A stretch of DNA of 64,000 nucleotides from Ranitomeya imitator (Eukaryota). This document shows, one piece after another, positions 3,001 through 44,322 of the stretch (positions are counted from its first letter, which is position 1; each line of letters opens with the position of its first letter). Location: the NCBI RefSeq assembly GCF_032444005.1, contig NC_091288.1, positions 40,858,001-40,922,000 of the forward strand. The letters are read 5' to 3'. The notes under the pieces were generated by a model, which saw nothing but the letters and a program-made list of their open reading frames with translations, was not told where the DNA came from and searched no databases. The translations under genes were made by a program, and so were the position numbers.

Positions 3001-6000
3001 CTTGCCCCCAGCACCAAAGAATCTTGACTGTACACTGCGCTGTGAGGATTCACAAGTCTGCAGTCGCATACAATGACTGCAGATTTGAGCCCCAAGCCTG
3101 GACAACCCCTTTAAATGATTTTTCTACTTTTATGACACTCCGCATCCCTGCTGATTAGCTGTATCCATCAGTGTCCGGATGTTAGCAGTGTATGGAGTGG
3201 AACTCCGCAGCGCCATCACGTGATTTAGTGGCCTCTGCACAGTACTGTAGATCAGCTCCTATTCAGATGTGGTGTTATTCTGCTCCGTATCCTGTTTATA
3301 CCTGATTACTGCTGATCCATGGGGATCCCGGATCTGCACCTATTTGATATTAGCAACCTATCCTATAGATCTGTCATCAATATACCATAGTAGTGGAAAA
3401 CCTTTTGAAATGATGGATCATAGATGGAGTTAAAACAAACTAAAAGGACGTCACAATTTTGTTGTTTTCATACGTCTCCTTGGCTAAACTGTGTGGACCT
3501 TTAATTCACATATTGCAGCTGTTTGACATTATTATAGTATTGCTGATTAACACGATTTGACTTTTTTTTTTTTTTTACAGTTCTGAGAGTGAAAATGAAG
3601 ATCAAGAACTACAGGTGACATCCACCGTCCGTCCAGAAGAGATCCCCACTGTGCCCGAAAACAAGTTTTTGATGAGAAAAAGCCCTGAAAGAGCTGAGGT
3701 GATGGAAGCACGAGTAAACAGAGAACGCGAGAGGGAAAGGTATGCGCCTCACTCATCTACCTACCTCCAATAAATACCCAATTTGCTAATTGTCCGAGCA
3801 TCTGTACAGGGGGATGTCTTTTGGCAGGACCATATCGTGCCACTTACCTCTTGGCAAAATAAAGAGAAAAAAATATTATAGTTGTAATTTACCATGAAAA
3901 CATGTGGATCAGACCTGGCTTCCTTGCACTGCAATACATGTTTAGAATTTTGCCTGTTTAGTTAAACTTTACTTATAATATTTCTATAATGCTCCGATTT
4001 CTATGTTTTCATCTTCACAGTTCACTTTATCAGCGAAGACTCTTAGTGACGAGGTCTGGAAGGAAAATCAAGGGTAGAGGCCCAAGAGTATGCATTTCGT
4101 TTTTCTCTCCAATTGATTTGTACCTAATTCTCCCGTATTTATGTTCGTTGTTGATTGTGGGGATGTCTGAACTCCGCACATTACAGTCCCGCAATTCCCT
4201 AATGCAGTCTGCACTGAAAATGTACATCGCTGTATCGTGTGGGCTTCTGCTGTTTTTTTGTTTTATTTTTTTCTCTACAAATGGTTTTTAGGCTAGATCC
4301 ACACTTTTCGATAGGAGGCTTCTGCACCGCTTCCATCAATTGTCACCTGAAGAAGCCCAGTATGCAACCTTTTTTTTTTTTTTTTTATAGCACAAACCTA
4401 ATTGGCTTCATTATAGTCAGTGAGGTCCTTATGGGGCTGTTTTTGTTGGTCATGTGACACATTAGTTTCAGCCGAAATGATAGCTAGCGCTCGCGTGCTC
4501 TTAACAGAATTGCTTTATCGATCCAGTAGTATAAAAGACACAAAAAAGTGGTTGAACACAACAGCACAAAAATTAAATAGGCAGGAGAAAAATATCCGCT
4601 GCGCTCCCATGCAACATATTTCAGATCTACATGGTTTGACAAAGGACAATTTAGGTCTGAAACATGTTGACCTGGAAGCGCAGCGGATATTTCTTTTCTG
4701 CCTATTTAATTTTTGTGCTGTTGTGTTCAACCATTTTTGTGCCTTTTTTATATTTTGGTCTAACATGTTCTATTTAATTTTTAGCGCTACCGTACACCTT
4801 CAAGGTCTAGGTCTAGAGATCGTTTTAGGAGAAGTGAGACTCCTCCACACTGGAGACAGGAAATGCAAAGAACCCAGAGAATGAGATATTCGAGCGGAGA
4901 GCGCTGGATCAAGGGAGATAAGTACGTTGTACCGATACACGTGGCCATTACAGATTGGTCTGGTCCCGCAGTTGGACATTGAGCTCACGTGGTTTACAGA
5001 AGGCAACCAAGATTCTATAATGCCAGCTGTGCACAAACCCTACGCGCCTCCTTTTTGTCACCACCTACCTAATAATATTACCATTGTTTGAAAGTATAGA
5101 CTGTGTAGAGGTGCCAACACTTAACTTGGCATGTTCTTAAGAGGCAGAGCGTATTGGTGCTGTGTTTCGACAAGGCATGAGTTTTAATAAACTCTGAAAA
5201 TCTCCTGTTACCCATGATTAGAGTTGGAGTAAATCAATTTGCAGGACATGATCCATCGGCCATGTCAGTGGTCTTCAGCCGCTGGACGGGAGCCCTGAGA
5301 ACTGCCTCTTATCTGACCGCATCTTGGATCTTCTTGCCTAATGCAACATCTTCGTTGTGGCGTGATGTCTATGTGACATCACGCCTGGCTGGTTAATCGA
5401 AAGAAAAGCCATGAATGCCGTCGAATAAGAATTGATTCTTGTGGCTCCTATCCAGAAGCCACCGATCACTGATGTGGCCGATGGCCCCAGTCCTGCAAAT
5501 CGTTTTGCATCAACTCTACAACTCTTGGTGTGTGACATCCGTGCTATAAGCTTTAGAAAAGACTTCAATATTTTCAGATTTCTCTTTATTGGGATGCCCC
5601 CTGTAGAAATAGCTTATCTTTAGGTACTTATTGCTTTTTTTTTATATATATACAGAAGTGAATTAAATGACAAAGATGATCAGAAAAGTCCTGTTCGCGG
5701 AAGAGAGAGGAAAGAGTCCGGTCAACGAGAAGGTTCTGAGAGTCCGCACAAAAAAAGTGATCACAGGAAGAGAAGCAAAGACCGCAAGCCAAGCAGCAAG
5801 GACAGAGAGTCTAAGGATGTAGAAAATGAAGAAAAACAGGACAAGACCTCGCGGAGAAAAAGAACGTCAGAAAGGAGGAGTGAAAGCAAAGAGAATGTAA
5901 AAAATAGCCGACACGATAAGCAAAGCAGACGTGATGACAGGAGCCGTTCAAGAAGTAAGGAAAGGAGGCACGAGAGGGGAAAGGATAAAGAAAAGCACTC

Positions 6001-8398: not shown

Positions 8399-8539
8399 TT
8401 TCTTTATCGCCTCTCATTGGGGGACACAGGAACCATGGGTGTATGCTGCTGCCACTAGGAGGCTGACACTATGCAAATAAAAAAGTTAGCTCCTCCTCTG
8501 CAGTGTACACCCCACCGACTGGCATTAAACTCTTCAGTT
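8399..8539 (+). repeat. DIRS-A left inverted terminal repeat
   Basis: Starts TTTCTTTATCGCCTCTCATTGGGGGACACAGG; its inner part is an exact reverse complement of the right ITR at 14527-14651. Confidence 0.95.
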
Positions 8540-9860
8540 TAGCTTAGTGTCAGTAGGAGGTGGACACGGGTCTTTCTTTAGACCCTTATCTACCTCAATG
8601 TGCGTCGTTTCTTTTCAGGTTTTTTCCGGATGGGATACAGGGTGAGCTGTCACACCTGTAGTCCCTCAAGCGGACTATGAGTACGGCGTGTACTGCCACC
8701 CCGTATCCTCATAGATCCCTCAGCAGGACCAAGAGCCTGGCACACAAGCGTGCTCAGAAGTCCGGTCCTGGCCCGTCCCCCACCCACTCGCCCACCAGAG
8801 CCTGTCGGTCGGAGGAGACGAGGACGTCCATCAGCAGCTCCTATGGACGTCTGATACCTTCTCAAGGTTAGTAGCAGACGACGGGGGATTTTACTAGGTG
8901 AGTATTTCTAAAGGGGTTCCCAGGACTCAGCGCGGGTCATCGCTGCATTTGCAGCACTTTCCCCGTTCCCTGCGCGGTGGCTACCTTTCCATGCCCCACC
9001 GCGTTCCTCCAGCGGTCGCCGTTCTTCCTTCAGGCCCCGGCCTCCCGGGGCCTGCTTGCGGCACACTCCTGCCTGCAACTTTTCCTTCAGCGGTCGCTGG
9101 CTCCTAATTTAGGCCCCGGCCTTTCCCGGGGCCTACTTGCGGCGTACCAGCTGCCCTCAGCGTTCCCCCCTCAGCGTTCTATGCGGGCCTCTCCGGCGGC
9201 GCTCACCTCCACAGCCAGCTGGGGCCTACTCCGGCGATTCTTCACCGGCGGCAGCGCTCCCTCTCTTAAATGCGGCGGCTGCCGCGCCGCTCTGCCAGGC
9301 AGCGTCTGCGCCGCGGGGATCTTCTCTCCGGTCACCGGCTCCTAATTTAGGCCCCGGCTTTTCCGGGGCCTACTCCGGCAACTCTTTTCTGGCGGCAGCG
9401 CTCTCTCTCTTTCATGCGGCGGCAGTGTCTGCGCCGCGGGGGTTCTTCTCAGCGGGCACCGGCTTCTAATATAGGCCCCGGCTTTTCCCGGGGCCTACTT
9501 CCGGTGCCGCGCTCCGCCCACTTCCTTCTTCATCGGGCGGGCTTTTTTTCCCGCCCGACATACTGTGCCTGCTCATCGGCGCCCCCCTGTCTGGCTCCGC
9601 CCCCTTCCTCCAGGGACAGCGTCTGTGTGTGCTCACCGCTTCTTAGCTGCAGGAGCTCACGCAGCGCGCCCCACACCTTCGCCACTGCATCCTCCGTGGG
9701 CACAAAATCTGCACAGAATCCAGCACCTCAGGGCAGGAGTTCTCCTCCGGCAAGTGGGACATCTTCCAGGACGGGTCCGTAAGTAGCTGCACTGCAGACT
9801 GACACCCCCCTCTGCCCCACTGTCCCCTAACCCACTGGCATCTTCAGAGGACCTCTCAAA

Positions 9861-11351
9861 ATGTCTACCTCTAAAGGGGGCCGCTCTCTCCCCCCTACTT
9901 CTTCTTCTGCCTTAGTCACGTACTTTGCTTGTTCGTCCTGTAACAGCAAACTTACCTCAGGTCAGTCCTCCCCGCTGTGTCAGTCCTGCAGCAACCCGAT
10001 TGTTCCCACCGCCCAGGATCCCCCGGCTGTTCCGCCCGAGAGTGATCCCCCCATCCCAGGATGGGCCGCCTCTCTGTCACAATCGGTGGCCGATTTAACA
10101 CGGGTATCTCAAACCCTGGTGTCCGCGCTGGATCGGTTACCCCTGCAGACCCCGGCCGTAGCCAGTGGGTCACAGGAACCGCCGCCAGAGCTCTCCTTGA
10201 TAAGCCACAAAAGGTCCAGACAGGAACATCGGTCTGAGTCCTCTTCGCGCTCCATCTCGCCGCTCGGCCCTCCCCCGCGGTTGGTGTCCCACCGATCCTC
10301 CTCCCCTGAGTCAGGCGAGGCATTATCTGATGCGCCTTCGGAGGATACTTCGGAGCTGGATCCTAACCAAATCGCCACCATGAGTGAGACAGTCCAGAAC
10401 CTCATTGGGGCAATAAACCAAACATGTGGCATCAAGGATCCCTCTACGGGACCCGCAGATCAGGCGGTTTCGTTTAGACGGGCCAAACCACCTTCAAAAT
10501 TTTTCGCTCCTCATCCTGAATTCGAGGAAATCGTGTCCAGAGAGAGAGAGAACCCCACTAGGCGTTTTCAGAGGGGAAAACGCCTGGGTGTGTTATATCC
10601 TTTTCCTCCAGAACTTACCGCCAATTGGTCGGCCTCTCCCTCGGTGGACCCCCCTGTTTCCAGGCTGTCCACCAACACGGTGCTTCCTCTGTCCGGCGGA
10701 GCATCTCTGAAGGATTCTAACGATAGAGTTATAGAATCCTTCGCGAAATCTGCTTTTGAAGCGGCTTCAGCGGCTCTATGTCCAGCCTTTGCGTCCACTT
10801 GGGCTTCAAAATCCATCTCAAAATGGGCCAAGGATCTTCGGCGAGGTATCCTGGATGGGGCGCCTCCCGCGCAATTAGTGGAACTTGCCAACCAGATTTC
10901 CCACGCTGGTGAATACCTGGTTTCCGCCTCCCTGGATGTCGCGTCTTGTGCGGCTCAAGCTTCCAGCAATGCCGTTGCCATCCGCCGGACCGTTTGGCTC
11001 AAGGCCTGGCAGGCGGACTTGTCCTCCAAAAAGTCCCTCACTAGTCTGCCCTTCCAGGGCTCTCGCCTCTTTGGTTCCCAGCTGGACCAAATAATTAAGG
11101 ACGCCACCGGGGGTACAAGTTCTCTTCTCCCCCAGGCTAAGCCTCGTCGCCCTCCTCCTAGACGACAGTTTCGTCCTTTTCGGCATTTTCGTCGCTTGGC
11201 TGCGTCAAACTCCTTTTCCCAGCAGCAACAGAGGCCACAGGCACGTCAAGAGAAGAAGGTGGTGTCCTTTAGGCCCACTCCGTCCTGGCGTCCTCGTTTC
11301 TCCCAGGGTAGATCCTCCAGGCCCAGGACTGGAAGATCCACCTCGGCATGA
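9861..11351 (+). CDS. DIRS-A gag-like ORF1, 496 aa
   Basis: ATG start, N-terminal CxxC...CxxC (CSSC...CQSC), and conserved blocks shared with DIRS-B and DIRS-C (VSFRRAK...FAPHPEF, DPPVSRL, ASNAVAIRRTVWLKAW.AD.SSKKSLTSLPF). Confidence 0.9.
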   Translation: MSTSKGGRSLPPTSSSALVTYFACSSCNSKLTSGQSSPLCQSCSNPIVPTAQDPPAVPPESDPPIPGWAASLSQSVADLTRVSQTLVSALDRLPLQTPAVASGSQEPPPELSLISHKRSRQEHRSESSSRSISPLGPPPRLVSHRSSSPESGEALSDAPSEDTSELDPNQIATMSETVQNLIGAINQTCGIKDPSTGPADQAVSFRRAKPPSKFFAPHPEFEEIVSRERENPTRRFQRGKRLGVLYPFPPELTANWSASPSVDPPVSRLSTNTVLPLSGGASLKDSNDRVIESFAKSAFEAASAALCPAFASTWASKSISKWAKDLRRGILDGAPPAQLVELANQISHAGEYLVSASLDVASCAAQASSNAVAIRRTVWLKAWQADLSSKKSLTSLPFQGSRLFGSQLDQIIKDATGGTSSLLPQAKPRRPPPRRQFRPFRHFRRLAASNSFSQQQQRPQARQEKKVVSFRPTPSWRPRFSQGRSSRPRTGRSTSA

Positions 11352-11382: not shown

Positions 11383-13257
11383 TTGGGCGGCCGTCTTCTC
11401 CTTTTCAGGGACGTCTGGATTTCCGCAGTAGAGGATGCATGGGTCAGGGAAGTTGTATCCTCGGGATACAAAATAGAGTTCGCTTCCCGACCTCGGGATC
11501 GTTTCTTCCAATCCCGTCCTCCAAGAGACCCCGCTCTAGTTCCGGGCTTCTTCTCAGCCATCGCTTCTCTGCTCAAATCCGGGGTAATCGTTCCCGTCCC
11601 AGAAAAAGAACGCTTCACGGGTTTCTACTCGAATCTTTTTGTGGTACCGAAAAAAGACTGCAAAGTTCGCCCCATTCTGGACCTCAAATTGCTGAACAGG
11701 AGAGTTCGCCTGAGACACTTCAGGATGGAATCCCTTCGTTCAGTAATTGCTTCCATGGAGGCTCAGGAGTTTCTATGCTCAATAGATATCCAGGACGCCT
11801 ACCTCCATGTCCCGATATTTCCCGGACATCACCGTTTCCTGCGCTTCGCAGTGCAACGAGATCATTTTCAGTTCGTTGCTCTGCCGTTCGGTCTTGCAAC
11901 CGCGCCAAGAGTGTTCACGAAGATCATGGCGGCGCTGATGGCCATCTTGAGAGTCAGAGGCTTGGTCCTATTTCCATATCTCGACGACATCCTCATCAAG
12001 GCTCCGTCCTTCGCTCAGGCCCACGAAAGCCTGTCCATTGTTCTCGACTCCTTAGCCCGTTTCGGGTGGCTGGTAAACCGGAAGAAGTCCTGCCTTATTC
12101 CTTCTCAGCGCATCATCTTTCTGGGCATGCTTTTCGATACTCGTCAGAGCAGAGTCTTCCTTCCCACAGACAAGAGATCCATTCTCTGTCGGGACATACA
12201 CTTGCTCCAGGGTCCTCGACCTCCCTCCCTCCGTTCGGCCATGAAGATTCTGGGGAGGATGGTAGCTACATTGGAAGCGATTCCCTTCGCCCAATTCCAT
12301 TCGCGACCCCTTCAGCAAGCCATTCTGTCTCAGTGGGACAGGTCGGTCTTCTCCCTGGATCAACCGATCAAACTCTCCTTTCGGGTCAGGCGGTCTCTCA
12401 ACTGGTGGCTGACGTCACCTCTCATCTCCCAGGGCAGGTCCTTCCTTCCGGTTCACTGGCAGGTGGTGACAACGGACGCCAGCCTGCTCGGCTGGGGTGC
12501 GTTTTTTCGCCACCTGACGGTTCAGGGCCGCTGGTCGCTGCAGGAGTCATCTCTGCCGATCAACGTCCTCGAAATTCGGGCCATCTTCCTGTCCCTCCGC
12601 CACTGGGAAAGGATCCTCAGGGGCCTTCCAGTCCGGATCCAGACGGACAACGCCACGGCTGTGGCATATGTCAACCATCAGGGGGGGACTCGGAGCTCCT
12701 TGGCCCTTGCCGAGGTATCCAAGATCCTCCTTTGGGCAGAGGCAACGGTTCCGGTGATATCCGCGGTGCATATCCCCGGCGTGGAAAACTGGGCCGCCGA
12801 CTTCCTCAGCCGCGAGGGCCTCGCGGCAGGGGAATGGTCCTTGCATCCGGAGGTCTTCCATCAGATTTGTCTTCGATGGGGAACTCCGGATGTGGATCTC
12901 ACGGCGTCCCGAGTCAACAGGAAGGCTCCGCAGTTCGTCTCCAGGTCCCGCGATCCTCTCGCAGTGGACGTCGATGCTCTGGCCATTCCTTGGTCACAGT
13001 TCGAGCTGCCCTACCTGTTCCCACCCCTTCCATTACTTCCCAAACTGTTGAAGAAGATCAAAGCGGAAGGGGTGCCGGTCATCCTGATCGCCCCGGATTG
13101 GCCCAGGAGAGCTTGGTTCGCGGAGCTCGTCAACCTTCTCGCGGACGCTCCCTGGCGCCTTCCAGACAGGCCCGATCTGCTGTCCCAGGGTCCGATCTGC
13201 CACCCGAATTCTCGGTCGCTCAGTTTAACGGCGTGGCTGTTGAGACCGCGGTTCTGA
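11383..13257 (+). CDS. DIRS-A pol: reverse transcriptase, RNase H and methyltransferase-like domain. The frame is open further upstream, across the gag stop, and has no ATG near its start
   Basis: GGRL...W N-terminus, RPILDL, LPFGLATAPRVFTK, YLDD; RNase H residues TTDAS, LEIRA, QTDNATAV, AADFLSR; C-terminal DLTAS...YLFPP methyltransferase-like segment. Confidence 0.95.
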   Translation: MGGRLLLFRDVWISAVEDAWVREVVSSGYKIEFASRPRDRFFQSRPPRDPALVPGFFSAIASLLKSGVIVPVPEKERFTGFYSNLFVVPKKDCKVRPILDLKLLNRRVRLRHFRMESLRSVIASMEAQEFLCSIDIQDAYLHVPIFPGHHRFLRFAVQRDHFQFVALPFGLATAPRVFTKIMAALMAILRVRGLVLFPYLDDILIKAPSFAQAHESLSIVLDSLARFGWLVNRKKSCLIPSQRIIFLGMLFDTRQSRVFLPTDKRSILCRDIHLLQGPRPPSLRSAMKILGRMVATLEAIPFAQFHSRPLQQAILSQWDRSVFSLDQPIKLSFRVRRSLNWWLTSPLISQGRSFLPVHWQVVTTDASLLGWGAFFRHLTVQGRWSLQESSLPINVLEIRAIFLSLRHWERILRGLPVRIQTDNATAVAYVNHQGGTRSSLALAEVSKILLWAEATVPVISAVHIPGVENWAADFLSREGLAAGEWSLHPEVFHQICLRWGTPDVDLTASRVNRKAPQFVSRSRDPLAVDVDALAIPWSQFELPYLFPPLPLLPKLLKKIKAEGVPVILIAPDWPRRAWFAELVNLLADAPWRLPDRPDLLSQGPICHPNSRSLSLTAWLLRPRF

Positions 13258-14270
13258 GAGCGTCTGGCCTTTCGGACCGGGTGATTCACACCATGATTCA
13301 GGCTCGGAAGCCTTCGTCTTCCAGGATCTACTACCGCACCTGGAAGGCCTACTTCCGGTGGTGCGAGTCCAACCGCGTTCCGCCTATGGTTTTTTCCCTG
13401 CCTTCTCTTTTGGCCTTCCTTCAGGAAGGACTGGATTCGGGCCTGGCTCTTAGTTCCCTGAAGGGTCAGGTCTCTGCGCTTTCCATCCTCTTTCAGAAGA
13501 CCTTGGCCTCTCGGCCACAGGTTAAGACCTTCTTTCAGGGGGTAGCCCACGCCGTCCCGCCGTACAGGGCCCCTGTGGAGGCATGGGACCTATACCTGGT
13601 ACTGGACGTTCTGAAGGTTTCTCCCTTTGAACCTCTTAGGGAGATTCCTCTATCAGTTTTATCATGGAAGGTAGCCTTTCTTGTGGCCATCACGTCCATT
13701 CGCCGCGTTTCCGAGCTGGCGGCCCTGTCTTGCCGTCCTCCGTTTTTGGTCATTCACCAGGACAAGGTGGTCTTCCGGCCCCCACCTTCTTTTCTTCCTA
13801 AGGTGGTTTCCACCTTCCACCTCAACGAGGACATCGTTCTACCTTCCTTTTGTCCAGCTCCGACTCATCCTCTGGAGCGATCATTGAACAAGCTGGACCT
13901 TGTCAGGGCTGTGAGGATCTATCTGGACAGAACGTCCACTTTCCGGAAGACGGATTCCTTTTTCGTCATTCCTGATGGCACGCGCAGAGGCCAGCCGGCT
14001 TCTAAAGCGACTATTGCTCGATGGATCAGAATGGCAATCTTGGAGGCTTACCGGGTCAAGAACAGAGTGCCCCCTCCTCACTCTACCCGGGCAGTCGGCG
14101 CCTCCTGGGCGGTGCACCACAGGGCTTCCGCCCTACAGCTGTGCAAAGCGGCAACTTGGTCTTCCATCCACACGTTCGCCAAATTTTACAAGGTCCATAC
14201 CTACGCATCGGCGGACGCCAGCCTAGGCAGAAGGATCCTGCAGGCGGCAGTGGTGAGTCCTCTGACCTGA
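11439..14270 (+). CDS. DIRS-A tyrosine recombinase ORF, 943 aa, with a ~600 aa N-terminal extension overlapping pol in another frame
   Basis: SAM-like/core segment YYRTWKAY...GLALSSLKGQVSALS; catalytic motifs SIRRVSEL (R), HSTR (H-x-x-R), WSSIHTFAKFY (W...Y). Confidence 0.93.
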   Translation: MGQGSCILGIQNRVRFPTSGSFLPIPSSKRPRSSSGLLLSHRFSAQIRGNRSRPRKRTLHGFLLESFCGTEKRLQSSPHSGPQIAEQESSPETLQDGIPSFSNCFHGGSGVSMLNRYPGRLPPCPDISRTSPFPALRSATRSFSVRCSAVRSCNRAKSVHEDHGGADGHLESQRLGPISISRRHPHQGSVLRSGPRKPVHCSRLLSPFRVAGKPEEVLPYSFSAHHLSGHAFRYSSEQSLPSHRQEIHSLSGHTLAPGSSTSLPPFGHEDSGEDGSYIGSDSLRPIPFATPSASHSVSVGQVGLLPGSTDQTLLSGQAVSQLVADVTSHLPGQVLPSGSLAGGDNGRQPARLGCVFSPPDGSGPLVAAGVISADQRPRNSGHLPVPPPLGKDPQGPSSPDPDGQRHGCGICQPSGGDSELLGPCRGIQDPPLGRGNGSGDIRGAYPRRGKLGRRLPQPRGPRGRGMVLASGGLPSDLSSMGNSGCGSHGVPSQQEGSAVRLQVPRSSRSGRRCSGHSLVTVRAALPVPTPSITSQTVEEDQSGRGAGHPDRPGLAQESLVRGARQPSRGRSLAPSRQARSAVPGSDLPPEFSVAQFNGVAVETAVLRASGLSDRVIHTMIQARKPSSSRIYYRTWKAYFRWCESNRVPPMVFSLPSLLAFLQEGLDSGLALSSLKGQVSALSILFQKTLASRPQVKTFFQGVAHAVPPYRAPVEAWDLYLVLDVLKVSPFEPLREIPLSVLSWKVAFLVAITSIRRVSELAALSCRPPFLVIHQDKVVFRPPPSFLPKVVSTFHLNEDIVLPSFCPAPTHPLERSLNKLDLVRAVRIYLDRTSTFRKTDSFFVIPDGTRRGQPASKATIARWIRMAILEAYRVKNRVPPPHSTRAVGASWAVHHRASALQLCKAATWSSIHTFAKFYKVHTYASADASLGRRILQAAVVSPLT

Positions 14271-14313: not shown

Positions 14314-14415
14314 CCCATGGTTCCTGTGTCCCCCAATGAGAGGCGATAGAGAAAACAGGATTTTTGGTTGCTTACCGTAAAATCTGTTTCTTGAAGCCTC
14401 CATTGGGGGACACAG
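14314..14415 (+). repeat. DIRS-A internal complementary region (ICR)
   Basis: The first half is complementary to 8399-8439 (one mismatch) and the second half to the right terminus up to 14700; together they spell the circle junction AATCCTG-TTTT-CTCTATCG. Confidence 0.93.
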
Positions 14416-14526: not shown

Positions 14527-14700
14527 AACTGAAGAGTTTAATGCCAGTCGGTGGGGTGTACACTGCAGAGGAGGAGCTAACTTTTTTATTTGCATAGTGT
14601 CAGCCTCCTAGTGGCAGCAGCATACACCCATGGTTCCTGTGTCCCCCAATGGAGGCTTCAAGAAACAGATTTTACGGTAAGCAACCAAAAATCCTGTTTT
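14527..14700 (+). repeat. DIRS-A right ITR with 3' extension
   Basis: Reverse complement of the left ITR, followed by GAGGCTTCAAGAAACAGATTTTACGGTAAGCAACCAAAAATCCTGTTTT, which matches the ICR. Confidence 0.95.
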
Positions 14701-15176: not shown

Positions 15177-16023
15177 TTAACTCAAAAAGTCAGTTTTTGG
15201 CCAGGTTCAACCAGAATGTGCAGTCTGACTAATCAGTCAATACTGTGCCATATGACCATTTGAACCAAGCCTTAGTCCATTTACTTTTTACAAATGTTCC
15301 TCATTTAGCTACTGCAACAGATCGTAAGACAATGCTCTTGCTTGGAGCAAAGTACAAGAAATGGGTACAGCTGTAACAGAAACGGCTGCTATAAAATAAG
15401 TTAAATTTTGTTCTCAAGATCAATCATCTGAAATGCTCCCTGCCTCTTAATATCCTGCTGGCGGCCTGGGGATGGGATTGTGAGCTGCAGCCTCCTAAAG
15501 ATTGATAGTTCGGGTCATTATCATTGAGCCACTGGTCTGAAATGTGTTCTCTGATGCTGTTAGCAGAGGTTGCTTTGCCTCTGCAGCAGAGGTTGCTTTG
15601 CCTCTACAGCAGAGGTTGCTTTGCCAGAAAGAATAGCTCCTCCCCTGCAGTATACACCCTCCCACCCGTGATTCCTGGGGGGGACCAGCGGCCCTGAGCA
15701 GCGTGATGAAGGAACACCGCTCCCCAGCTTAGAAGACTGGCATCTGTTGTCAGAACTAACCAATGTACTGGAAGAAAGGACTTCCCTTGATTCAGGGAGG
15801 ATTTCAATGTCCACCACCTGAGAGACTGTGTGACTCGCTGGGGAAGGAGGAACTGACGAGGGAGAACGGGTTCCTGTCCCAAACAGCCAAGAGGGCATAC
15901 TGTAGGGGGCGAAGGTGTAATTGAGCAAATGAAACCGCCTCCAAGGCTGCTACCGTCCTGCCGAGAACTCTCATACTGAGGCGCAGAGAGTGAGTGCAGG
16001 GCTGAGAGAGCTTCTCACTGTAA

Positions 16024-16865
16024 GGCCATGTTCACACAGTGCGTTTTTTACTGCGGAACCGCTGCGATTTTGCCGCTGCGGCTCCGCAGCTGTTTTCCAT
16101 GCAGGGTACAGTACACTGTACCCTATGGAAAACAGGAACCACTGTGCACATGATGCGGGAATTAACTAAAAAAGCCGCGCTGAATAGCTGCGGTAAAAAA
16201 GAAGTACCATGTCACTTCTTTTTGCGGAACTGCAGCGGTTCTGCACCCATAGACCTCCATTGTGAGGTCAAACCCGCAGATGAAAAAAATATCTGCGGGT
16301 TTTCTGCGGTTTGTGGTGCAGAACCGCTGCAGTGTGACTGCCCCCCCCCCCCCCCCCCCCCCGTGCCCTCATCTCCCCCCCCCTTATACTTACCCAGCCT
16401 CCCGGTGTCCGTCCGTCCGTCTTCTCCCTGGGCGCCGCCATCTTCCAAAATGGCGGGCGCATGCGCAGTGCGCCCGCCGAATCTGCCGGCAGATTCGTTC
16501 CAAAGTGCATTTTGATCACTGAGATATAACCTATCTCAGTGATCAAAATAAAAAAAAATAGTAAATGACCCCCCCCCCCCCCCCTTTGTCACCCCCATAG
16601 GTAGGGACAATAAAAAAAATAAAGAATTTTTTTTTTTTCCCCACTAAGGTTAGAATAGGGGTAGGGTTAGGGTATTTTCAGCCATTTTAACCCTAAAAAA
16701 CTTCCTAGAAAACACACAGACTCTGCATAGAAAACTGCATTAAAAAAACGCACTAAAAAACGCATCAAAAAACGCACCAAAAACAGGACCTGCGTTTTCT
16801 GCCAAGAGCTGCGGTTTTTAGTGCAGAAAAAACAGCAGGGAAATCAGGAACGTGTGAACATGGCC
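16024..16865. mobile_element. TAA-flanked MITE (PIF/Harbinger, Tourist-like) inserted in DIRS-C pol
   Basis: TAA at 16021-16023 and 16866-16868; TIRs GGCCATGTTCACAC / GTGTGAACATGGCC. Confidence 0.8.
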
Positions 16866-17010
16866 TAAGGCTGGCGTCACACGCTCAGTATTTGGTCAGT
16901 ATTTTACATCAGTATTTGTAAGCCAAAACCAGGAGTGGAACAATTAGAGGAAAAGTATAATAGAAACACGTCACCACTTTTGCATTTATCACCCACTCCT
17001 GGTTTTCACT

Positions 17011-17216
17011 TAGGAGAAAAAAGGATCATCCCCGCGCTGCCGTAAGAAGAATTTCAAAAATTGTAGAGGTTTCAACATGGTTTATTCTAAAATATTTGTG
17101 GTATGTCCTGATGAAGGGGTCACCTGAACCCTGAAACGCGTAGAGTAAACCACGTTGAAACCTCTACAGTTTTTGAAATTCTTATGGCAGCGTGGGGATG
17201 ATCCTTTTTTCTCCTA
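17011..17216. repeat. Penelope-like terminal palindrome nested in the MITE
   Basis: Arms 17011-17089 and 17141-17216 are near-perfect reverse complements; the spacer carries a hammerhead core. Confidence 0.65.
17105..17145 (+). ncRNA. Minimal type I hammerhead ribozyme motif
   Basis: CTGATGA (17108-17114), stem II AGGG/CCCT, GAAA (17133-17136), palindromic ACGCGT stem III, GTA triplet (17140-17142). Stem I has only 2 bp (TC/GA). Confidence 0.6.
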
Positions 17217-18349
17217 TCTGTGCTTCAATCAGGTCCTGCACTGACCTGTGGATCTGCAGCAGCCGCCATTAATATATGTCCTTCCTTCAATCTCACCAGG
17301 TGAGTAGTTCTCTTGGTGGGCAACTTTGTGTAACGTTTGAGAAGACCCTATTCGTGCTTTTGTGTCTCCCTCTTTTCTCCCACTCCTGGTTTTGGCTTAC
17401 AAATACTGATGTAAAATACCAAATACTGCTAGTGTGACGGCAGCCTAAGACTGAGATCTTTTCCTGGGGAAGAAGAACCAACCCCCGGAATGAATCGAGT
17501 ATCATTCCTAGAAAGGAAATTCGCTGAGCCGATACTGGGGAAGATTTTTTGAAGTTTATCTTCCAACCCAGCGAGAAAGAGTATTGTGATGTTCACGGCC
17601 TCCTTGCAGGTGCGGAAAGAGGGGCCTTTGATGAGGATATCGTCTAGATACGGTAGCACCACCACGCCTCGGGTGTGTAGGATGGCCACGGCGGCCGCCA
17701 TGACCTTGGTGAATAACCTGGGAGTGGTGGCGAGGCTGAAGGGCAGAGCAACAAATTGAAAGTGACCTTCCTGAATTGCGAAGCGAAAAAACCTTTGGTG
17801 AGAAGGTAAAATAGGAATGTGGAGGTACGTGTCCTGGATGTCTATAGACGCCAGGAACTCGCCTTTTTCATTGGAGCCGATGACAAAACTAAGCGATTCC
17901 ATCCGGAACCATCGCGCCCTGACAAACTTGTTCAGCAGTTTTAGGTCCAGTATGGGCCGTACTGTACCGTCCTTTGGAACAATGAAGAGGTTTGAATAAA
18001 AACCTTGAAACCTTTCGTTTTGAGGGACCGGAATAATAACTTCGTCTTTTCTCAGGGAGTTATAGCTTGGAAGAACTCTGATGCTTTTGCCCTGGAAGGA
18101 GAAGACAGGAAAAAACGATTTGGTGGAAGAGAGGAGAATTTTATCTTGTATCCGGAGGACACTAGGTCGCGGACCCATTCATCGTGAACGACCGAGAGCC
18201 ACGCGTCGCTGAAGGAAAGCAGGCAGCCGCCTACTTTGAGGGTGTCCTCCGGATACCGCAGGGAGTCATTGTGTGGGAGACCTGCCCGGTCTGGACCCCT
18301 GGATCCTGACTGCCTAGGCCTGTCTCTCCATGAAGGGGAAGGTTTGTAA

Positions 18350-18737
18350 GGGTATGTGTCCACGATCAGGATGGCCGGCGGTATCGTCGGAGCGGCTTTG
18401 CCGCTCTGCGGTAAGCCCCGCCCCCTTCTGGGACGCGATGATGCCGGATGTGTTCACAGCACACATCCGGCATCATCGCACACCAGACATAGGGCCCTGT
18501 GCTATATCTTGCGGCGACGCAGCGTTGCCGCAAGATATACGGACATGCTGCTATCTGAAAAGACGCGCAGCATGTCCGGAGTCGCAGGGCCGCCGCGTGC
18601 GTGTTACCACGCATAGTGGAGACGGGATTTCATTAAATCCCCTCCACTATGCTGTAACATCTGGACGCTGCGTGTCTGACGCTGCGGCTCTATGCAGCAT
18701 CAGACACGCAGCGTTTCCTGCACGTGGAAACATACCC
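18350..18737. mobile_element. TAA-flanked MITE inserted in the 3' end of DIRS-C gag
   Basis: TAA at 18347-18349 and 18738-18740; TIRs GGGTATGTGTCCACG / CGTGGAAACATACCC; removing it restores the gag sequence QTSYKPSPSW. Confidence 0.82.
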
Positions 18738-19940
18738 TAAGAGGTCTGGGGACCTCTATCCCTACGTTGTGCCCGGCCGGGTCCGGAAGATGTGGAAGTA
18801 GAGGACCAATTTGAGTTGGACCGAAAAAATCGGGACTGAGCCTGCTGCTGCTGGTTCCGAAAGGTTCTCTGTTGTAGAAAAAATTTACTCTTCCCTCCAG
18901 TGGCGTCGGAAATTAATTGGTCGAGCTTTTCGCCAAAAAGGTGACCGCTCTGATATGGAAGAGAAGTCAATGACTTTTCTCCTTCGCCACATTGGGGGAC
19001 ACTGGACCACGGGGTGTTATGCTGCTGTCACTAGGAGGCTGACACTAAGCTGAGACAAAAAAAGGTTAGCTCCTCCCCTGCAGTATACACCCTCATGCTG
19101 GCTTCCAGAGACCCAGTTCAAGCTTAGTGTCCGTAGGAGGCACACTGATTTTTACTTTCTATCCGGACGAAGGGGGCGACGGATTCTTTCATGTTCCGAT
19201 CTCCCCCAAACCAACAACAGGCGAGCACGGGAGTTTCACCTCTCCGTATCCTCTCCTGCGACGAGGGAGCCACTGCCTGAGCTGACCCTTTTGGGCGACG
19301 GTCCCTTTCACGGGCGCCGATCTCCCCACGTAGTACAGACGAGCACTGGTGTTTTACCTCCAGTATCCTCTTCTGCAGCCAGGCCTTTTTATTGCCGGAC
19401 ATCAGCCCTGTCCACCAGGTTTCACCCTCGGCTGTACAGAGGCACTGTAAATTCGATGAAACAAGAAAAGGTTCTGCGGTTCGGAGGGCTCTCTCTTAGT
19501 GGTGGCACACATTTTTCCGGGCCCCTTATATTCCGGCCATCAGCGGCCGAGCGCCGGGCCGAAGCCGAAAATTTAGTCCCCGGCTTCGGCCTAGCACAGG
19601 CCGCATCCCGATAGGCTCCGCCCCCCATTTTGCGTCATTATACGGCGCCGCCCCCTGGTCCTGGCGCTTCTCGCTCTCTGCGAGATCTCCTCTCCCCACT
19701 CTCGGCGGCCATCTTGGATTTTCCCTCTGCACGCCGCAGCTCCTGCTCCAGCCGCAGCTACCCACACGTGCAGCGTTTTCTCCGTCAACTGTCGCCAGCA
19801 GGACCTGGTATGCCGCCGCCTCTTCTCTCTCTCTGCGGGACACAGGACCTCGGGTAAGGAGACCACGTTAGGTTCTCCCCTGCAGCGCCGCCCTAGCTTC
19901 CTTAGATTCAGACCCGGTCTATCTTACATTAGGGTGCACC

Positions 19941-21413
19941 ATGTCCCAGTCAAAGTCTAAAAAGTCCTCTAAGGTGCATACTACCTTCTTTTCTGCGTGT
20001 ACCACCTGCCAGGCTCCACTTCCTCGGCCTCAGAGTTCCTTCCTCTGCTCAGCCTGCGATGCCCCATGTGCCCAGGAGCCCTCCACCGACTCTGGCGTAC
20101 CTAGTCCCCCCGCGTGGGTCGCGTCACTTTCGCAATCCGTGGATTTTTTAGCTAATGCCATCAAATCCATTCAGAACCCTCCTGGGGAACAGGGCAACCC
20201 GTTACAGGTGTTAAGAGATCCCTCCGTAGCAGGGGAATCGTCGGCCACCAGGGGCCGCTCTCTCCGGAAAGAGGCACGGTCATCTAGAAAACGGATCCGC
20301 ACTACCTCTCCTGAGCGCTCACCTCGCCACTCAGCTTCTGGCAGCTCCACCTCTCGCTCACCCTCTTTGGGGGCTCGCAGCGTTCACGACTCTGAATATG
20401 AGTCTGATGTATCCTTAGACCCGGAGGCTCCGGAGTTTAGATCTACGGTTGACTCCCTCATTGTGGCAGTCAATCACGCACTTAAAGTGGACGATGACTC
20501 TAATTCTGCTCCGGACCACGCAGTCTCCTTTACTAGAACCAAACGTTCTCATAAAACTTTCGCCTCTCACCCTGATTTTCTGGATATAGTCAGGCGACAC
20601 AGGGAGCGTCCGGATAAGCGTTTCACGGGAAAAAAGGACCTTGTATCGAAATATCCTTTTTCAGCAGATCTCGTGAAAGACTGGACGGATCCCCCAATAG
20701 TAGATCCTCCGGTTTCGCGCCTTGCTTCCAAAATGCTCCTATCCGTCCCGGAGGGCGCTTCGATTAAGAGTCCCACTGAACGCCAGCTAGATTCCCTAGC
20801 TCGCTCAGTGTACGAAGCCTCAGGTTCTTCCCTATCTCCCTCTTTCGCCGCGGCTTGGGTGGCCAAGGCAATGGTTTCCTGGGCGGACGCTCTAGCGAAA
20901 TCCATTCATGAACAGGATCTCCTGTCTGAGATGGCGGACCTTGCTAAACAAATAGCCATGGCTGGTGATTACGTGATGTACGCATCTCTCGATGCAGCGA
21001 ATTGCGCAGCATCGGCGGCCTCAAACGCCATCACTATCAGAAGGGCTATTTGGCTCAGGGAGTGGCGCGCAGATTCCTCCTCTAAAAAATCTCTGATTTC
21101 TCTCCCTTTTTAGAGCGGGCGTCTTTTTGGTCAAAAGCTAGACCAGCTTATTTCCGACGCTACAGGGGGAAAGAGCAAGTTCCTTCCCCAACAGAGGCCC
21201 AAGGCGGCCTTCCAGCGCCAGCCATATTTTCGCTTTCGGCCCTTTCGTACCAGCCCAGCCTGGTCCAATCCTGCCGGTTTTTCCAGATCGGACCGTTCCG
21301 CTCGCTCAGACAGGGACGTTCGTCCCTCTTTCAGGCCGAATCCGTCCTGGCGAGGAAAGCCTAGGCAGCCCAGGACCAGAGGTTCCAGACCCCCCAGATT
21401 CCCTCCTCAATGA
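19941..21413 (+). pseudogene. DIRS-B gag; premature TAG at 21111-21113, natural TGA at 21411-21413
   Basis: The frame continues after the TAG with SGRLFGQKLDQLISDATGGKS, homologous to DIRS-A SRLFGSQLDQIIKDATGG. Confidence 0.9.
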
Positions 21414-24307: not shown

Positions 24308-27113
24308 TCAGATGGTACACGGAGTTATTTGGTTGTATTGTTTCCCTCCCAGGGACTGCTTTGGGACGTCCCATGGTCCTGTGTCCCCCAATGTGGCGAA
24401 GGAGAAATAGGGATTTTTGTGTGTACTCACCGTAAAATCCTTTTCTCCGAGCCACTCATTGGGGGACACAGCACCCACCCTGGTAGCCTTACGGCTCGTT
24501 ACCTTTTTTAGTTTTAGACTGTTTTGTTGACATGTTATACTCTAATGTTACTTGATATTTTGTTATTATCCTACTGCTTTTGCCCTGAACTGGGTCTCTG
24601 GAAGCCAGCATGAGGGTGTATACTGCAGGGGAGGAGCTAACCTTTTATTGTCTCAGCTGTCAGCCTCCTAGTGACAGCAGCATAACACCCCATGGTCCTG
24701 TGTCCCCCAATGAGTGGCTCGGAGAAAAGGATTTTACGGTGAGTACACACAAAAATCCCTATTTTGGAAGCAGAATCCGCACGCCAGTCCCTGAGCCATA
24801 AGGACCTCTGGATGGTGATGGCGTTTGCTGCTGCTTGCGAAGCACAGTTAGCAGCATCCAGGGATGCGGTCACTACAAAATCTCCAGCTCTGGCTATCTG
24901 AGTAGCGAGGTCTGCTATCTCGGGGGGGAAGATTGGTATCCAGCACCGCTGAAGACAAGATCTCAGCCCAGTGGGTCATAGCCTTAGCCACCCATGTAGC
25001 AACAAAAGATGGGAAGAGTGTGGCTGCTGAGGCTTCAAACGTTGTATTGTTGATCTGACGATCGGTTGGGTTTTTAATCGAGGCGCCCTCCGAAGAGGAT
25101 AAAACAGATTTAGTAGCCAGGTGAGATACCGGGGGAGAGTACGACCAATCTTTTCTTAGATCTTGGGCAAAGGGATATTTTGACTCCATGGGCTTCTGCC
25201 CTGTGAATCGTTTATCTGGACGGATCCTGTGAGATTCAACGATTTCCTTAAATTCGGGATGAGTGGCAAACACTCTATGAGCTCGCTTGGTCCTCTTAAA
25301 GGACACGGCATGATCCATTTTGGATAAAGGTTCCTCATCAAGCTTCAAAACCTTATTCACTGACTCAGAGAGTGGAGAGTCTCTTGATCGTGATGAAATT
25401 CCTGATCTAGGGACGTGTCAGAATCGTCCTCTGAAACAGGTTCTCTACTAGCCCCAATGGAAGGGGAGCGAGAAATGGAGCTCTCAGAACCCGAATCCCG
25501 GTGATGGTCTGGGGATATGGCATGAGTCCTTTTCCAGGAAGAGTGAGAACTCCTTGGCAAGGTACGACCCCTGGAATACGAGAGGTTCTGACGATCGGAA
25601 GTGTCGTCTGAAATCGTGCCCTTGTTACAGGAAGGGTCTCGGAACGAGTCTAACGCTTTTGCCAGGGATGCCATAGACCGGGTAAGGGAGGTAGCCCACT
25701 CAGGGGGACTAGGCTCACTGGGTTCGGTATCAGTAACAGGTGGTCCCTGAACAGTCACCGGTTCACAAGCTGTGCACAATGCAGTATTGTGACCCCTTTG
25801 TAAGGACACCTTACAAGAGGTACATGCAGCGAAGAACACAGTGTGGGTTTTCCCAGACTTTTTGTGAGGCTTTGATTGAGACATAGCATAGCCTTGAGGA
25901 GAGCGCTTACTAGCAGGAGAAGGGTTAAGCTATGTTTCTGCAGCTTACCTAGGTCCTGTGTCTTGAGTCCCCAGGGAAGGTCTGCGGTGTATGCCCAGAA
26001 AACGCTAGTCCTGAAGGCTGTGATTCAAAAGGCTGGAGCAGCATCAGCTCTGTGGGTGTCCCAAGATGGCCGCCGAGATCGGGAAGTGAGCGCTTCTCGG
26101 GGAAAAGCCGGGGCTAAATTTTAAACCTGCGGTTGCGGCTGCAGCGCCGCGACCGCTATTAGCGCCATCCTTAAGCCACACTCCTTCATTGAATTGCCGC
26201 ACTGCGGTCCACCCACGGACCTGGGCTTTAAGGTGTGGACCTCCCAAACCCCGGGGACTAGGACCCCCCAGCGCCTCGGCCCCCGCAGTGTACTCACGGT
26301 AGATGCAGTGGGCCGGTGCTCATTCCACTGTCGCCATAGTCAGGGAGGAGGTGGAGAGCTTCTGCCGCCTTCCATCATCCGCTATATCAGTGGTGATGCA
26401 GAGGGGGGCTGCATGGACGCCATACATATTATATCCGGCTATGCACCTGGCTCCAGGAGAGGTAGATGGAGGGCTACTCCATGTGGTCGCCTGCTATGGA
26501 GGGGGGAGATCGGAATGCGAAGGAACCGTCGCCCGTAAAGTGAGCTCAGGGCTGGCATCCAACGTTGCAGGAAAGGGTACGGGAGGGACGCTCCACGTAC
26601 TTGCCTGTTGATTCTGGGGAGATCGGAACCTAGAAAGGATCCGTCGCCCCCATTCGCTCTGTTGAGGGTAAAATAGAATAAAAAGTAAAAAACTAAAATA
26701 AAAACGGTGGGGTCTGAAAGCAGACCCAAGTGCCTCCTACAGACACTAAGCAAGAACTGGTTCACTTAGAGCCAGCAGGAGGGTGTATACTGCAGGGAGG
26801 AGCTATTCTTTGTGTTAATTAGAGTCCTCCTAGTGGCAGCAGCATAACACCCATGGTCCTGTGTCCCCCAATGAAGCATAGGAGAAACTACAACTCCCAG
26901 GATGTTGAATATGTGGGGGGTTGTAATTTTACAACAGCTTTGATCACACTTTGCGTTCCACTGATCTAAGGATTCCTTATAATATTGTTTTAAAAAAAAT
27001 AATCCAGTTAAACTAATTCAGGATTTATTCTAATAAATGTAATAAGGACATTGGTAAAAAGTGATGTCAGGATTATAGAATTCCCCCTGCTTCTACTGGG
27101 GCATAATGCCTCT

Positions 27114-43730: not shown

Positions 43731-43914
43731 GTAAGATAAGTAATAAATAGCCTGCACGGTAGGACAGACCTTCACACCCGCCGAGGAGCCGGCTAGTGCG
43801 GGCGGGAGGGCTCATCCATGGCAGCGGGGAGCTGTGTGCATTCGTAGTAAGTGCATGATCCCTACTGATCCCCATGGCTGCAGACGGAGGCGTCCCGGGG
43901 GGGAGATGACAGCT

Positions 43915-44322
43915 CCCATCATGCACCGGCCTGAGGATATGTTGGGCTCCCATCATGCACTGGCCTGAGGATATGTTGGGCTCCCATCATGCACCGGCCT
44001 GAGGATATGTTGGGCTCCCATCATGCACCGGCCTGAGGATATGTTGGGCTCCCATCATGCACCGGCCTGAGGATATGTTGGGCTCCCATCATGCACCGGC
44101 CTGAGGATATGTTGGGCCCCCATCATGCACCGGCCTGAGGATATGTTGGGCGCCCATCATGCACCGGCCTGAGGATATGTTGGGCGCCCATCATGCACTG
44201 GCCTGAGGATATGTTGGGCTCCCATCATGCACTGGCCTGAGGATATGTTGGGCTCCCATCATGCACCGGCCTGAGGATATGTTGGGCTCCCATCATGCAC
44301 TGGCCTGAGGATATGTTGGGGG
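43915..44322 (+). repeat. 34-bp VNTR, 12 units (CCCATCATGCACCGGCCTGAGGATATGTTGGGCT)
   Basis: Directly visible near-identical tandem units. Confidence 0.95.

What the first reader, a model, noticed from the sequence alone, without database searches (positions are those of the whole stretch)
8632..8714. Covarying two-hairpin RNA module just inside the left ITR of all three DIRS families
Seen: DIRS-B has two tandem copies (19172-19258 and 19292-19375) and DIRS-C two (minus, 26650-26568 and 26534-26454) of a module. Hairpin 1 is GGG-CGA-CGG...CCG-ATCT-CCC with variable apical sequence. Hairpin 2 has a 1x3 internal loop: GAG-Y-ACG...CGT-AYC-CTC. DIRS-A has hairpin 2 as CTATGAG-T-ACGG...CCGT-ATC-CTCATAG (8675-8714), preceded by a different-sequence hairpin (8632-8665). 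Compensatory changes are visible: ACG/CGT becomes ACT/AGT in B2, and GAG/CTC becomes AAG/CTT in C1. The last C copy is degraded. Established: DIRS elements have no tRNA primer-binding site. Inference: this is a selected RNA structure, such as a packaging signal, RT-recruitment or priming element, translational control element, or an unrecognised self-cleaving motif.
Basis: partly seen in the sequence, partly recalled or inferred. Interest (0 to 1): 0.75.

Follow-up and report, generated by a model that had tools for sequence, protein, structure and literature searches.

The report
Conserved two-hairpin module in DIRS leaders
Three families of a poison-frog jumping gene (DIRS retrotransposons) carry, just inside their left end, a short non-coding stretch that folds into two imperfect hairpins and has been kept by selection, probably as a signal recognised by the element's own proteins, though its function is untested.

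Summary

- **Conservation:** Module 1 is the best conserved B-versus-C segment (81% identity; ITR 71%; flanks 47-50%), although the Gag proteins are only 43% identical.
- **Hairpin 1:** its two strands are two invariant runs of 9 and 11 nt (P<1e-5).
- **Covariation:** four base pairs changed on both sides and stayed paired (P about 0.003-0.02). With four sequences this is suggestive, not proof.
- **DIRS-A:** it shares only the hairpin-2 core (E about 0.02 within its leader). Its hairpin 1 is a different sequence.
- **What it is not:** there is no Rfam match, tRNA, ORF, right-end copy or ribozyme signal.
- **Strand:** the complementary strand folds equally well as RNA or DNA, so the strand is open.

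My reading is a selected, folded cis-element of the DIRS leader, most likely a protein-recognition signal for packaging or reverse-transcriptase recruitment. A role in the minus-strand cDNA is the main rival.

First readers of this scan noted similar hairpin-rich DIRS leaders on other pieces of this genome; those notes are unchecked.

The parts
8632..8665 (+). DIRS-A hairpin 1' (a different sequence from the B/C hairpin 1; about 14 bp with two bulged A on the 3' strand)
   Evidence: Folds. In other copies the differing letters fall in its apical loop (8646, 8648).
8675..8714 (+). DIRS-A hairpin 2 (7-bp lower stem, 2-nt bulge or 1x3 loop, ACGG/CCGU upper stem)
   Evidence: It is the top hit of the hairpin-2 model R2 in A's leader, E 0.02. 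No listed variant among hundreds of laid contigs.
19172..19207 (+). DIRS-B module 1, hairpin 1
19218..19258 (+). DIRS-B module 1, hairpin 2
19293..19327 (+). DIRS-B module 2, hairpin 1
19336..19375 (+). DIRS-B module 2, hairpin 2 (carries two of the compensatory pairs)
26616..26651 (-). DIRS-C module 1, hairpin 1
26568..26607 (-). DIRS-C module 1, hairpin 2 (GAG/CTC changed to AAG/CTT)
26504..26534 (-). DIRS-C module 2, hairpin 1
26454..26493 (-). DIRS-C module 2, hairpin 2 (lower half degraded, apical stem kept)
8415..8539 (+). Left ITR of DIRS-A (the exact inverted-repeat part). The module starts 93 nt inside it.
   Evidence: 100% complementary to 14527-14651.
19048..19120 (+). Left ITR of DIRS-B (the part found as an exact repeat). 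Module 1 starts 52 nt inside it.
   Evidence: 99% complementary to 24586-24658.

Best explanation
The module is a selected cis-acting element of the 5' leader of dendrobatid DIRS1-like retrotransposons, and it works as folded single-stranded nucleic acid.

Structure. It consists of two imperfect hairpins about 10 nt apart and is present once (A) or twice in tandem (B, C). Each hairpin has fixed unpaired nucleotides:
- Hairpin 1 has a C.U mismatch and a bulged A.
- Hairpin 2 has a C.U mismatch and a Y / A-Y-C internal loop.

Most likely mechanism (inferred). If transcription starts near the inner end of the left ITR, as it does in Dictyostelium DIRS-1, the module sits close to the 5' end of the genomic plus-strand RNA. 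There it would be the recognition site at which an element-encoded protein selects this RNA. The candidates are Gag, which has a conserved N-terminal CX2C-X13-CX2C motif, or the reverse transcriptase. The outcome would be packaging or RT recruitment.

What is shown and what is not. Shown: conservation, fold and compensatory changes. Inferred: the strand, the binding partner and the step of the life cycle.
For: Position. The module lies at the same place in three families, 52-93 nt inside the left ITR repeat, on the left side only, with no copy at the right end or elsewhere in the 64 kb window.

Selection.
- B-versus-C identity is 81% for module 1 and 71% for the ITR. The stretch from the ITR end to the module and the stretch after the modules are 47-50% identical.
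- Gag is 43% identical between B and C and 39% between A and B.
- The two strands of the hairpin-1 stem are the two longest invariant runs, 9 and 11 columns, with P<1e-5 by column permutation.

Structure.
- RNAalifold gives the same two hairpins on its own.
- Four pairs changed on both sides and stayed paired. In the tool's shuffle, 11 of 500 reach this. Under my re-pairing null, P is 0.003.
- Pairwise identity is 0.84 and 0.74 in the stems, 0.56 and 0.42 in the apical loops and 0.37 in the linker. The unpaired hairpin-1 nucleotides are invariant.
- In A the lower stem of hairpin 2 is a different but complementary sequence around the same core.

Other genomes. Contigs from two other coded species cover hairpin 2 of A with no listed variant. 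The differing letters fall in the hairpin-1' loop, and other families join at 8671-8673 with a different hairpin-1 3' strand.

Non-coding. A has stops in all three frames, and the copies differ by frame-breaking indels.

Literature. How DIRS RNA is chosen and primed is unknown (PMC7192593).
Against: - The sample is four B/C copies plus one partial match in A, all from one window. The copies are related, and the structure was derived from the same sequences, so the covariation statistics are optimistic.
- Hairpin 1 is invariant in B and C, so it says nothing about structure as opposed to plain sequence.
- The complementary strand folds as well or better, both as RNA and as DNA. The Y.A position of hairpin 2 is C.A on the plus strand but G.U on the minus strand in three copies.
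- No raw RNA reads were available, so the transcription start and even transcription of the module are not shown (contigs only, and the RNA label is a guess).
- Hairpin 1 is identical in B and C although their Gag N-termini are only 43% identical. That fits a more conserved partner (RT, 64% identical between A and B) or a host factor better than it fits Gag.
- A donor-like site lies downstream of the module in A (near 8898). If it is used, spliced RNAs would also carry the module, which would weaken a role as sole packaging signal.
Confidence: 0.4

Rival explanations
1. The fold acts in the minus-strand single-stranded cDNA. The complement of the RNA 5' leader is the 3' end of the linear single-stranded cDNA, which is a true DIRS intermediate. 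Hairpins there could prime or position second-strand synthesis, or help restore the ends on the right ITR and ICR.
For: - The minus strand folds into the same two hairpins with equal or lower energy as RNA. As DNA the z-scores are -5.5, -2.6 and -3.7.
- On the minus strand the hairpin-2 internal loop becomes a uniform 2-nt bulge, because C.A turns into G.U in B1, B2 and C2.
- DIRS-1 amplifies through linear single-stranded antisense cDNA that lacks the left ITR, and second-strand priming is unexplained (PMC7192593).
Against: - Two or three pairs are G.U on the plus strand (B2 at the top of hairpin 1; A at 8636-8661) and become A.C mismatches on the minus strand.
- No complementarity of the hairpin-1 arms to the ICR or right end was found.
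- The mechanism is hypothetical for any DIRS.
Confidence: 0.17
2. It is a double-stranded DNA element: a tandemly repeated internal enhancer or promoter, or a palindromic protein-binding site such as one for the tyrosine recombinase. On this view it is conserved for its sequence, not for a fold.
For: - The hairpin-1 arms are invariant in sequence in all four B/C copies.
- Tandem duplication of a unit of about 118 bp is typical of enhancers.
- A's hairpin 1' weakly resembles the boundary motif that flanks the ITRs and the ICR (P 0.03 and 0.013).
Against: - Compensatory double changes, including a paired transversion, are not expected for a protein-binding DNA site.
- The asymmetries of the hairpin-1 arms (the C.U mismatch and the extra A) are themselves invariant.
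- The gap between the hairpin-1 arms varies from 12 to 15 nt, unlike the fixed 6-8 bp spacer of recombinase core sites (my own knowledge).
- B/C hairpin 1 does not resemble the ITR boundary motif.
Confidence: 0.12
3. It is a translational control element of the leader, such as an IRES-like or ribosome-shunt structure or a 5'-proximal hairpin, and it tunes Gag synthesis.
For: The module lies in a long leader (570-1150 nt) upstream of the gag AUG. That leader is rich in hairpins and contains upstream AUGs.
Against: - The module is far from the gag AUG, 1150 nt away in A.
- The distance to gag is not conserved between families.
- No known IRES family matched.
Confidence: 0.08
4. It has no function of its own: an inherited tandem repeat whose stems are chance palindromes, with the similarity kept by recent exchange of 5' ends between families.
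For: - There are only five copies.
- C2 is decaying.
- Retroelements do recombine.
- A z-score near -2 to -3 for a single hairpin pair is not rare in GC-rich leaders.
Against: - The linker and flanks have diverged (37-50% identity) while the stems are 74-100% identical, so any exchange is not recent and selection is local.
- Invariant runs coincide exactly with the two strands of one stem (P<1e-5).
- Four compensated pairs are present.
Confidence: 0.08
5. It is an unrecognised self-cleaving ribozyme that processes the 5' end of the element's RNA, as hammerheads do in Penelope-like elements and HDV-like ribozymes do in some LINEs.
For: It has two helical domains with conserved internal-loop nucleotides, near the presumed RNA 5' end.
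Against: - No ribozyme family, and no Rfam family at all, matches the module even at E<=10.
- There is no junction or pseudoknot signal.
- The conserved core is small.
Confidence: 0.03

Closest known systems
Packaging (Psi) and leader stem-loops of retroviruses and LTR retrotransposons (my own knowledge of the family; not tested here)
   Same: Several stem-loops lie in the untranslated leader between the terminal repeat and gag. They are conserved in structure more than in sequence, sometimes duplicated, and carry unpaired nucleotides for protein contact.
   Different: DIRS elements have inverted repeats, no tRNA primer-binding site and a tyrosine recombinase. Gag here has a CX2C-X13-CX2C motif rather than CCHC knuckles. 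There is no sequence or model similarity to any Rfam leader element, and binding is untested.
HIV-1 TAR and hepadnavirus epsilon (5'-proximal bulged hairpins bound by a viral protein; my own knowledge)
   Same: Hairpin 2 has a lower stem, a small pyrimidine-containing bulge or internal loop with fixed sequence, an upper stem and a 5-6 nt apical loop. It sits near the presumed 5' end of the genomic RNA.
   Different: There is no sequence relation. No terminal-protein domain was seen in the RT ORFs by Pfam. Epsilon-type protein priming has never been shown for DIRS.
The 3' hairpin of Dictyostelium DIRS-1 (positions 4792-4805), proposed to self-prime reverse transcription (cited in PMC7192593)
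   Same: It is the only structured cis-element so far proposed for DIRS replication, and it is likewise inferred from sequence alone.
   Different: That hairpin is at the 3' end of the RNA. The module here is at the 5' side only, is much larger (two hairpins, about 87 nt), is repeated, and is conserved across families.
Hammerhead ribozymes in Penelope-like elements and retrozymes (PMC4918198, listed)
   Same: They are small structured RNA motifs embedded in the terminal regions of retroelements.
   Different: There is no match to hammerhead or any other ribozyme model, and no catalytic core is recognisable.

Membership tests
DIRS1-like tyrosine-recombinase retrotransposon (context of the module) | Inverted terminal repeats plus an internal complementary region that matches both outer termini | tested here: met
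   ITR pairs are 100% (A) and 99% (B) complementary. The ICR at 14322-14415 (A) and 24370-24475 (B) carries the complements of the left and right terminal extensions side by side.
DIRS1-like tyrosine-recombinase retrotransposon (context of the module) | Gag-like ORF, RT/RNase H ORF and a tyrosine recombinase instead of an integrase | tested here: met
   Pfam finds LAP2alpha (DIRS Gag-derived) in ORF1, and RVT_1 and RT_RNaseH in ORF2. Phage_integrase is found in B at E 3e-4, below Pfam's cut-off. Gag relatives are in Ranitomeya, Dendrobates and Xenopus.
Any described RNA family, including self-cleaving ribozymes (Rfam 15) | Match to the family covariance model at or near its gathering score | tested here: not met
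   There are 0 gathering hits in the whole window. No hit overlaps the module at E<=10 in the A or B leaders.
tRNA primer-binding site of LTR retroelements | A stretch of 10-18 nt next to the terminal repeat that starts with TGG and is complementary to a tRNA 3' end, conserved between copies | tested here: not met
   Only C1 has TGG in front of the G-run; B1, B2 and C2 do not. ARAGORN finds no tRNA or tRNA-like gene in the window. The frog tRNA set itself could not be compared.
Retroelement packaging or leader signal | Lies in the leader between the terminal repeat and gag, on the sense side only | tested here: met
   There is no copy at the right end or elsewhere.
Retroelement packaging or leader signal | Structure maintained by compensatory change | tested here: inconclusive
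   Four compensated pairs in four sequences: 11/500 shuffles and P 0.003. That is too few sequences for an R-scape-type test.
Retroelement packaging or leader signal | Present in the genomic RNA, bound by Gag/NC, and needed for encapsidation | not testable with these tools
   Only assembled contigs were available, and the RNA label of the runs is a guess.
Tyrosine-recombinase core site (lox/FRT type) | Two inverted binding arms around a short spacer of fixed length | tested here: not met
   The hairpin-1 arms are separated by 12-15 nt, which varies between copies, and are asymmetric. The fixed 6-8 bp spacer is from my own knowledge.

The most novel reading that the evidence does not exclude
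The module is the missing cis-acting start signal of DIRS replication, the functional counterpart of a primer-binding site or of hepadnaviral epsilon for tyrosine-recombinase retrotransposons. It would act in one of two ways. It could be the RNA site where the reverse transcriptase is loaded. Or it could be, as its complement at the 3' end of the single-stranded cDNA, the hairpin that starts second-strand synthesis.
Probability: 0.1. Interest if true: 0.85.

Novelty: new member of a known kind. Interest (0 to 1): 0.5.

Why it matters
DIRS elements are the least understood order of retrotransposons. Their primer, their packaging signal and the way the second strand is made are all unknown (PMC7192593).

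This module is short, sharply bounded and better conserved than the ITR, with fixed unpaired nucleotides. That gives experimenters a concrete candidate to probe, bind and mutate. It also gives annotators a covariance model to scan vertebrate genomes.

If the module proves to be confined to poison-frog families, it is a lineage-specific leader element of modest interest.

Tried and rejected
2. The hairpin-1 pattern was scanned in viral, metagenome and genome contigs. It returned only chance matches in high-GC bacteria. None of the 242 matches has hairpin 2 or an ITR motif nearby, and mean GC is 67%.
3. An ITR probe and an RT alignment against viral contigs found nothing.
4. Rfam gave nothing, and there are no tRNAs.
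5. I searched for pairing between the module and the element's 3' region with RNAduplex. The first run timed out. The second gave unconstrained long duplexes no better than shuffles.
6. I tested whether hairpin 1 copies the ITR boundary motif. The result is marginal for A (P 0.03 and 0.013) and absent for B/C.
7. Coding was rejected.
8. The Xenopus DIRS paper holds no supplementary sequences, and no DIRS paper found mentions leader hairpins.
9. The sharp fall in laid depth after 8832 is reported only as an observation. The tool warns that dips in contig depth are not findings.

Full report
**Setting.** The window comes from a dendrobatid poison frog. The first ORF of the element at 8.4-14.7 kb has its best relatives in Ranitomeya imitator (93%), Dendrobates tinctorius (67% and 45%) and Xenopus (about 40%). 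Three DIRS1-like elements are present.
- DIRS-A lies on the plus strand. Its inverted repeat 8415-8539 / 14527-14651 is 100% complementary.
- DIRS-B lies on the plus strand. Its repeat 19048-19120 / 24586-24658 is 99% complementary.
- DIRS-C lies on the minus strand from about 26887 downward.
- Their ORFs carry LAP2alpha (the DIRS Gag-derived domain), RVT_1 and RT_RNaseH. B also has a weak Phage_integrase match.
- Each of A and B has an internal complementary region holding the complements of both outer terminal extensions side by side.
- B sits inside C, and C's reverse transcriptase continues on the minus strand at 17429-18178.

**The observation.** The sequences at the stated coordinates are as described.
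- The hairpin-1 pattern occurs exactly four times, at B1, B2, C1 and C2, with none expected by chance.
- Each copy folds into two hairpins. Z-scores against dinucleotide shuffles are -4.85 (A), -2.76, -2.07, -3.21 and -0.45 for the decayed C2. The hairpins survive in 341-nt folds of each leader.
- RNAalifold, run without any structure from me, returns the same two hairpins. Hairpin 1 has a C.U mismatch and a bulged A. Hairpin 2 has a C.U mismatch and a one-by-three internal loop.

**Selection.** Between B and C the segment identities are as follows:

| Segment | Identity |
|---|---|
| ITR | 71% |
| ITR end to module 1 | 47% |
| Module 1 | 81% |
| Spacer between modules | 68% |
| Module 2 | 69% |
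| Next 120 nt | 50% |

- The same two families have Gag N-termini only 43% identical. A and B Gag are 39% identical and their RTs 64%.
- Within the module, mean pairwise identity is 0.84 and 0.74 in the stems, 0.56 and 0.42 in the apical loops and 0.37 in the linker. The three unpaired nucleotides of hairpin 1 never vary.
- The two longest invariant runs of the four-way alignment (9 and 11 columns) are exactly the two strands of the hairpin-1 stem. No column permutation out of 100,000 gave two runs as long.
- The module is therefore a locally constrained element, not a passenger.

**Structure.** Four pairs changed on both sides and remained paired:
- A-U to U-G at the top of hairpin 1 (B2);
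- G-C to A-U in the outer stem of hairpin 2 (B2);
- G-C to A-U in the GAG/CUC stem (C1);
- G-C to U-A, a double transversion, in the ACG/CGU stem (B2).

In the tool's shuffle, 11 of 500 reach four such pairs, and 5 of 500 reach the covariation score. Sliding the partners by one to three columns gives 0 to 3. In my own null, the 3' columns were re-paired at random, and four compensated cells were reached with P 0.003. With four related sequences, and a structure read from those same sequences, this is suggestive rather than conclusive.

**DIRS-A.** A model of the whole module finds only the four B/C copies (E 1e-14 to 1e-20) and scores A at 9-11 bits. A model of hairpin 2 alone scores A's 8675-8714 at 11.5 bits. 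That is E 0.95 across the window, but E 0.02 and the top hit within A's own leader. What A shares is the core around the internal loop, the two-hairpin layout and the position. Its outer stem is a different, complementary sequence, and its hairpin 1 is unrelated in sequence. So the claim that all three families share the module holds for hairpin 2 only.

**Other genomes.** Only Logan contigs could be laid.
- In runs of the source species, of a second coded species and of an unlabelled sample, the stretch 8419-8832 is covered by many contigs.
- Hairpin 2 has no listed variant. The letters that differ from the window fall in the apical loop of hairpin 1' (8646, 8648) and just outside the stems (8666, 8722-8739).
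- Contigs of other families join at 8671-8673 with a different hairpin-1 3' strand in front of the same hairpin 2. One of these comes from a fourth coded species.
- These tables cannot phase changes, so they add conservation but not covariation. Whether any of these runs is RNA is a guess, so transcription is not shown.

**What it is not.**
- No Rfam family reaches its threshold anywhere in the window, and none touches the module at E<=10.
- There is no tRNA and no consistent TGG-type primer site.
- There is no ORF: A has stops in all frames, and the copies differ by 1- and 2-nt indels.
- The hairpin-1 arms occur nowhere else in the elements.
- There is no copy at the right end.

**Which strand?** The complement folds into the mirror hairpins with equal or lower energy as RNA. 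As single-stranded DNA the z-scores are -5.5, -2.6 and -3.7. The Y.A position in hairpin 2 is U-A in A and C1 but C.A in B1, B2 and C2, and C.A becomes a G.U pair on the minus strand. Conversely, B2 and A each have a G.U pair that exists only on the plus strand. The strand is open.

**Mechanism.** In Dictyostelium DIRS-1 the left repeat lies upstream of the transcription start, so the RNA begins near its inner end. The primer of reverse transcription is unknown, the ICR is not needed for first-strand synthesis, and the product is a linear single-stranded antisense cDNA lacking the left repeat (PMC7192593).

If the frog elements behave alike, which is an inference, the module lies within the first 100-200 nt of the genomic RNA and at the 3' end of the cDNA. 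Fixed unpaired nucleotides set in conserved or compensated stems are what protein-recognition hairpins look like.

I therefore favour a recognition signal for an element protein on the plus-strand RNA, for packaging or RT recruitment (0.4). The cDNA-hairpin role is the main rival (0.17). A duplex DNA site (0.12), translational control (0.08), no function (0.08) and a ribozyme (0.03) follow.

**Limits.** My pattern scans of the large collections returned only bacterial chance matches. Viral contigs hold no relative. The phylogenetic breadth of the module is therefore untested.

**Earlier notes.** First readers of this scan described hairpin-rich, duplicated DIRS leaders on other pieces of the same genome. 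Those notes are unchecked and are not counted as evidence.

**Verdict.** This is a real, selected, probably folded cis-element with no described counterpart in DIRS elements. The evidence for structure is good but thin. The function and the acting strand are open.

Noticed in passing
window 18940-24764 within 15600-26887: DIRS-B is inserted inside DIRS-C. C's leader and gag lie at 26887-24770 on the minus strand, and its RT continues at 17429-18178 on the minus strand (Pfam RVT_1). This is a DIRS-into-DIRS nesting, as reported for Dictyostelium DIRS-1.
   Followed up: partly
window 8833-9730: Laid contig depth falls from hundreds or thousands to single or double figures after 8832 and rises again near 9730. 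Other copies continue differently after 8829, with a stretch that resembles B/C hairpin 1. This part of A's leader also holds internal repeats (about 9000-9500). The tool warns that dips in depth are not findings.
   Followed up: partly
window 9861-9990, 19941-20060, 25884-25770 (minus): The Gag N-termini of A, B and C all carry a CX2C-X13-CX2C motif, a possible zinc-binding nucleic-acid contact, although the proteins are only about 40% identical.
   Followed up: no
window 14681-14689 and 24733-24741; 8608-8619: The right terminal extension of A and B holds a conserved splice-donor-like ACG|GTRAGY. A strong acceptor-like pyrimidine tract plus CAG|G ends 12 nt before A's module, and a similar one precedes C1. 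No GT-AG joint was seen in the laid contigs.
   Followed up: partly
window 8632-8665 versus 8415-8433 and 14322-14337: The two strands of A's hairpin 1' weakly resemble the boundary motif that flanks both ITRs and the ICR (P 0.03 and 0.013). B/C hairpin 1 does not.
   Followed up: yes
window 8568-8585 and 26709-26726 (minus): A small hairpin (GGGTCT, 6-nt loop, AGACCC) sits at the inner end of the ITR homology in A and C but not in B.
   Followed up: no
window 51398-53010: An apparently intact Tc1-like DNA transposon. It has a 355-aa ORF with HTH_Tnp_Tc3_2 and DDE_3 domains between terminal inverted repeats of about 200 bp that are 97-100% complementary.
   Followed up: partly
window 40300-42754; 49630-50253; 43912-44320: Three tandem arrays: 20-nt unit x 123 copies, 20-nt unit x 32 copies, and 34-nt unit x 12 copies.
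   Followed up: no
window 57640-59121 and 46321-47037: Two uninterrupted host-like ORFs: a BTB-BACK-Kelch protein (493 aa) and a PHOSPHO-type phosphatase (238 aa).
   Followed up: no
window 11439-14270: A 943-aa ORF overlaps the RT ORF of A in another frame and has no Pfam match. The recombinase is expected in its 3' part.
   Followed up: no
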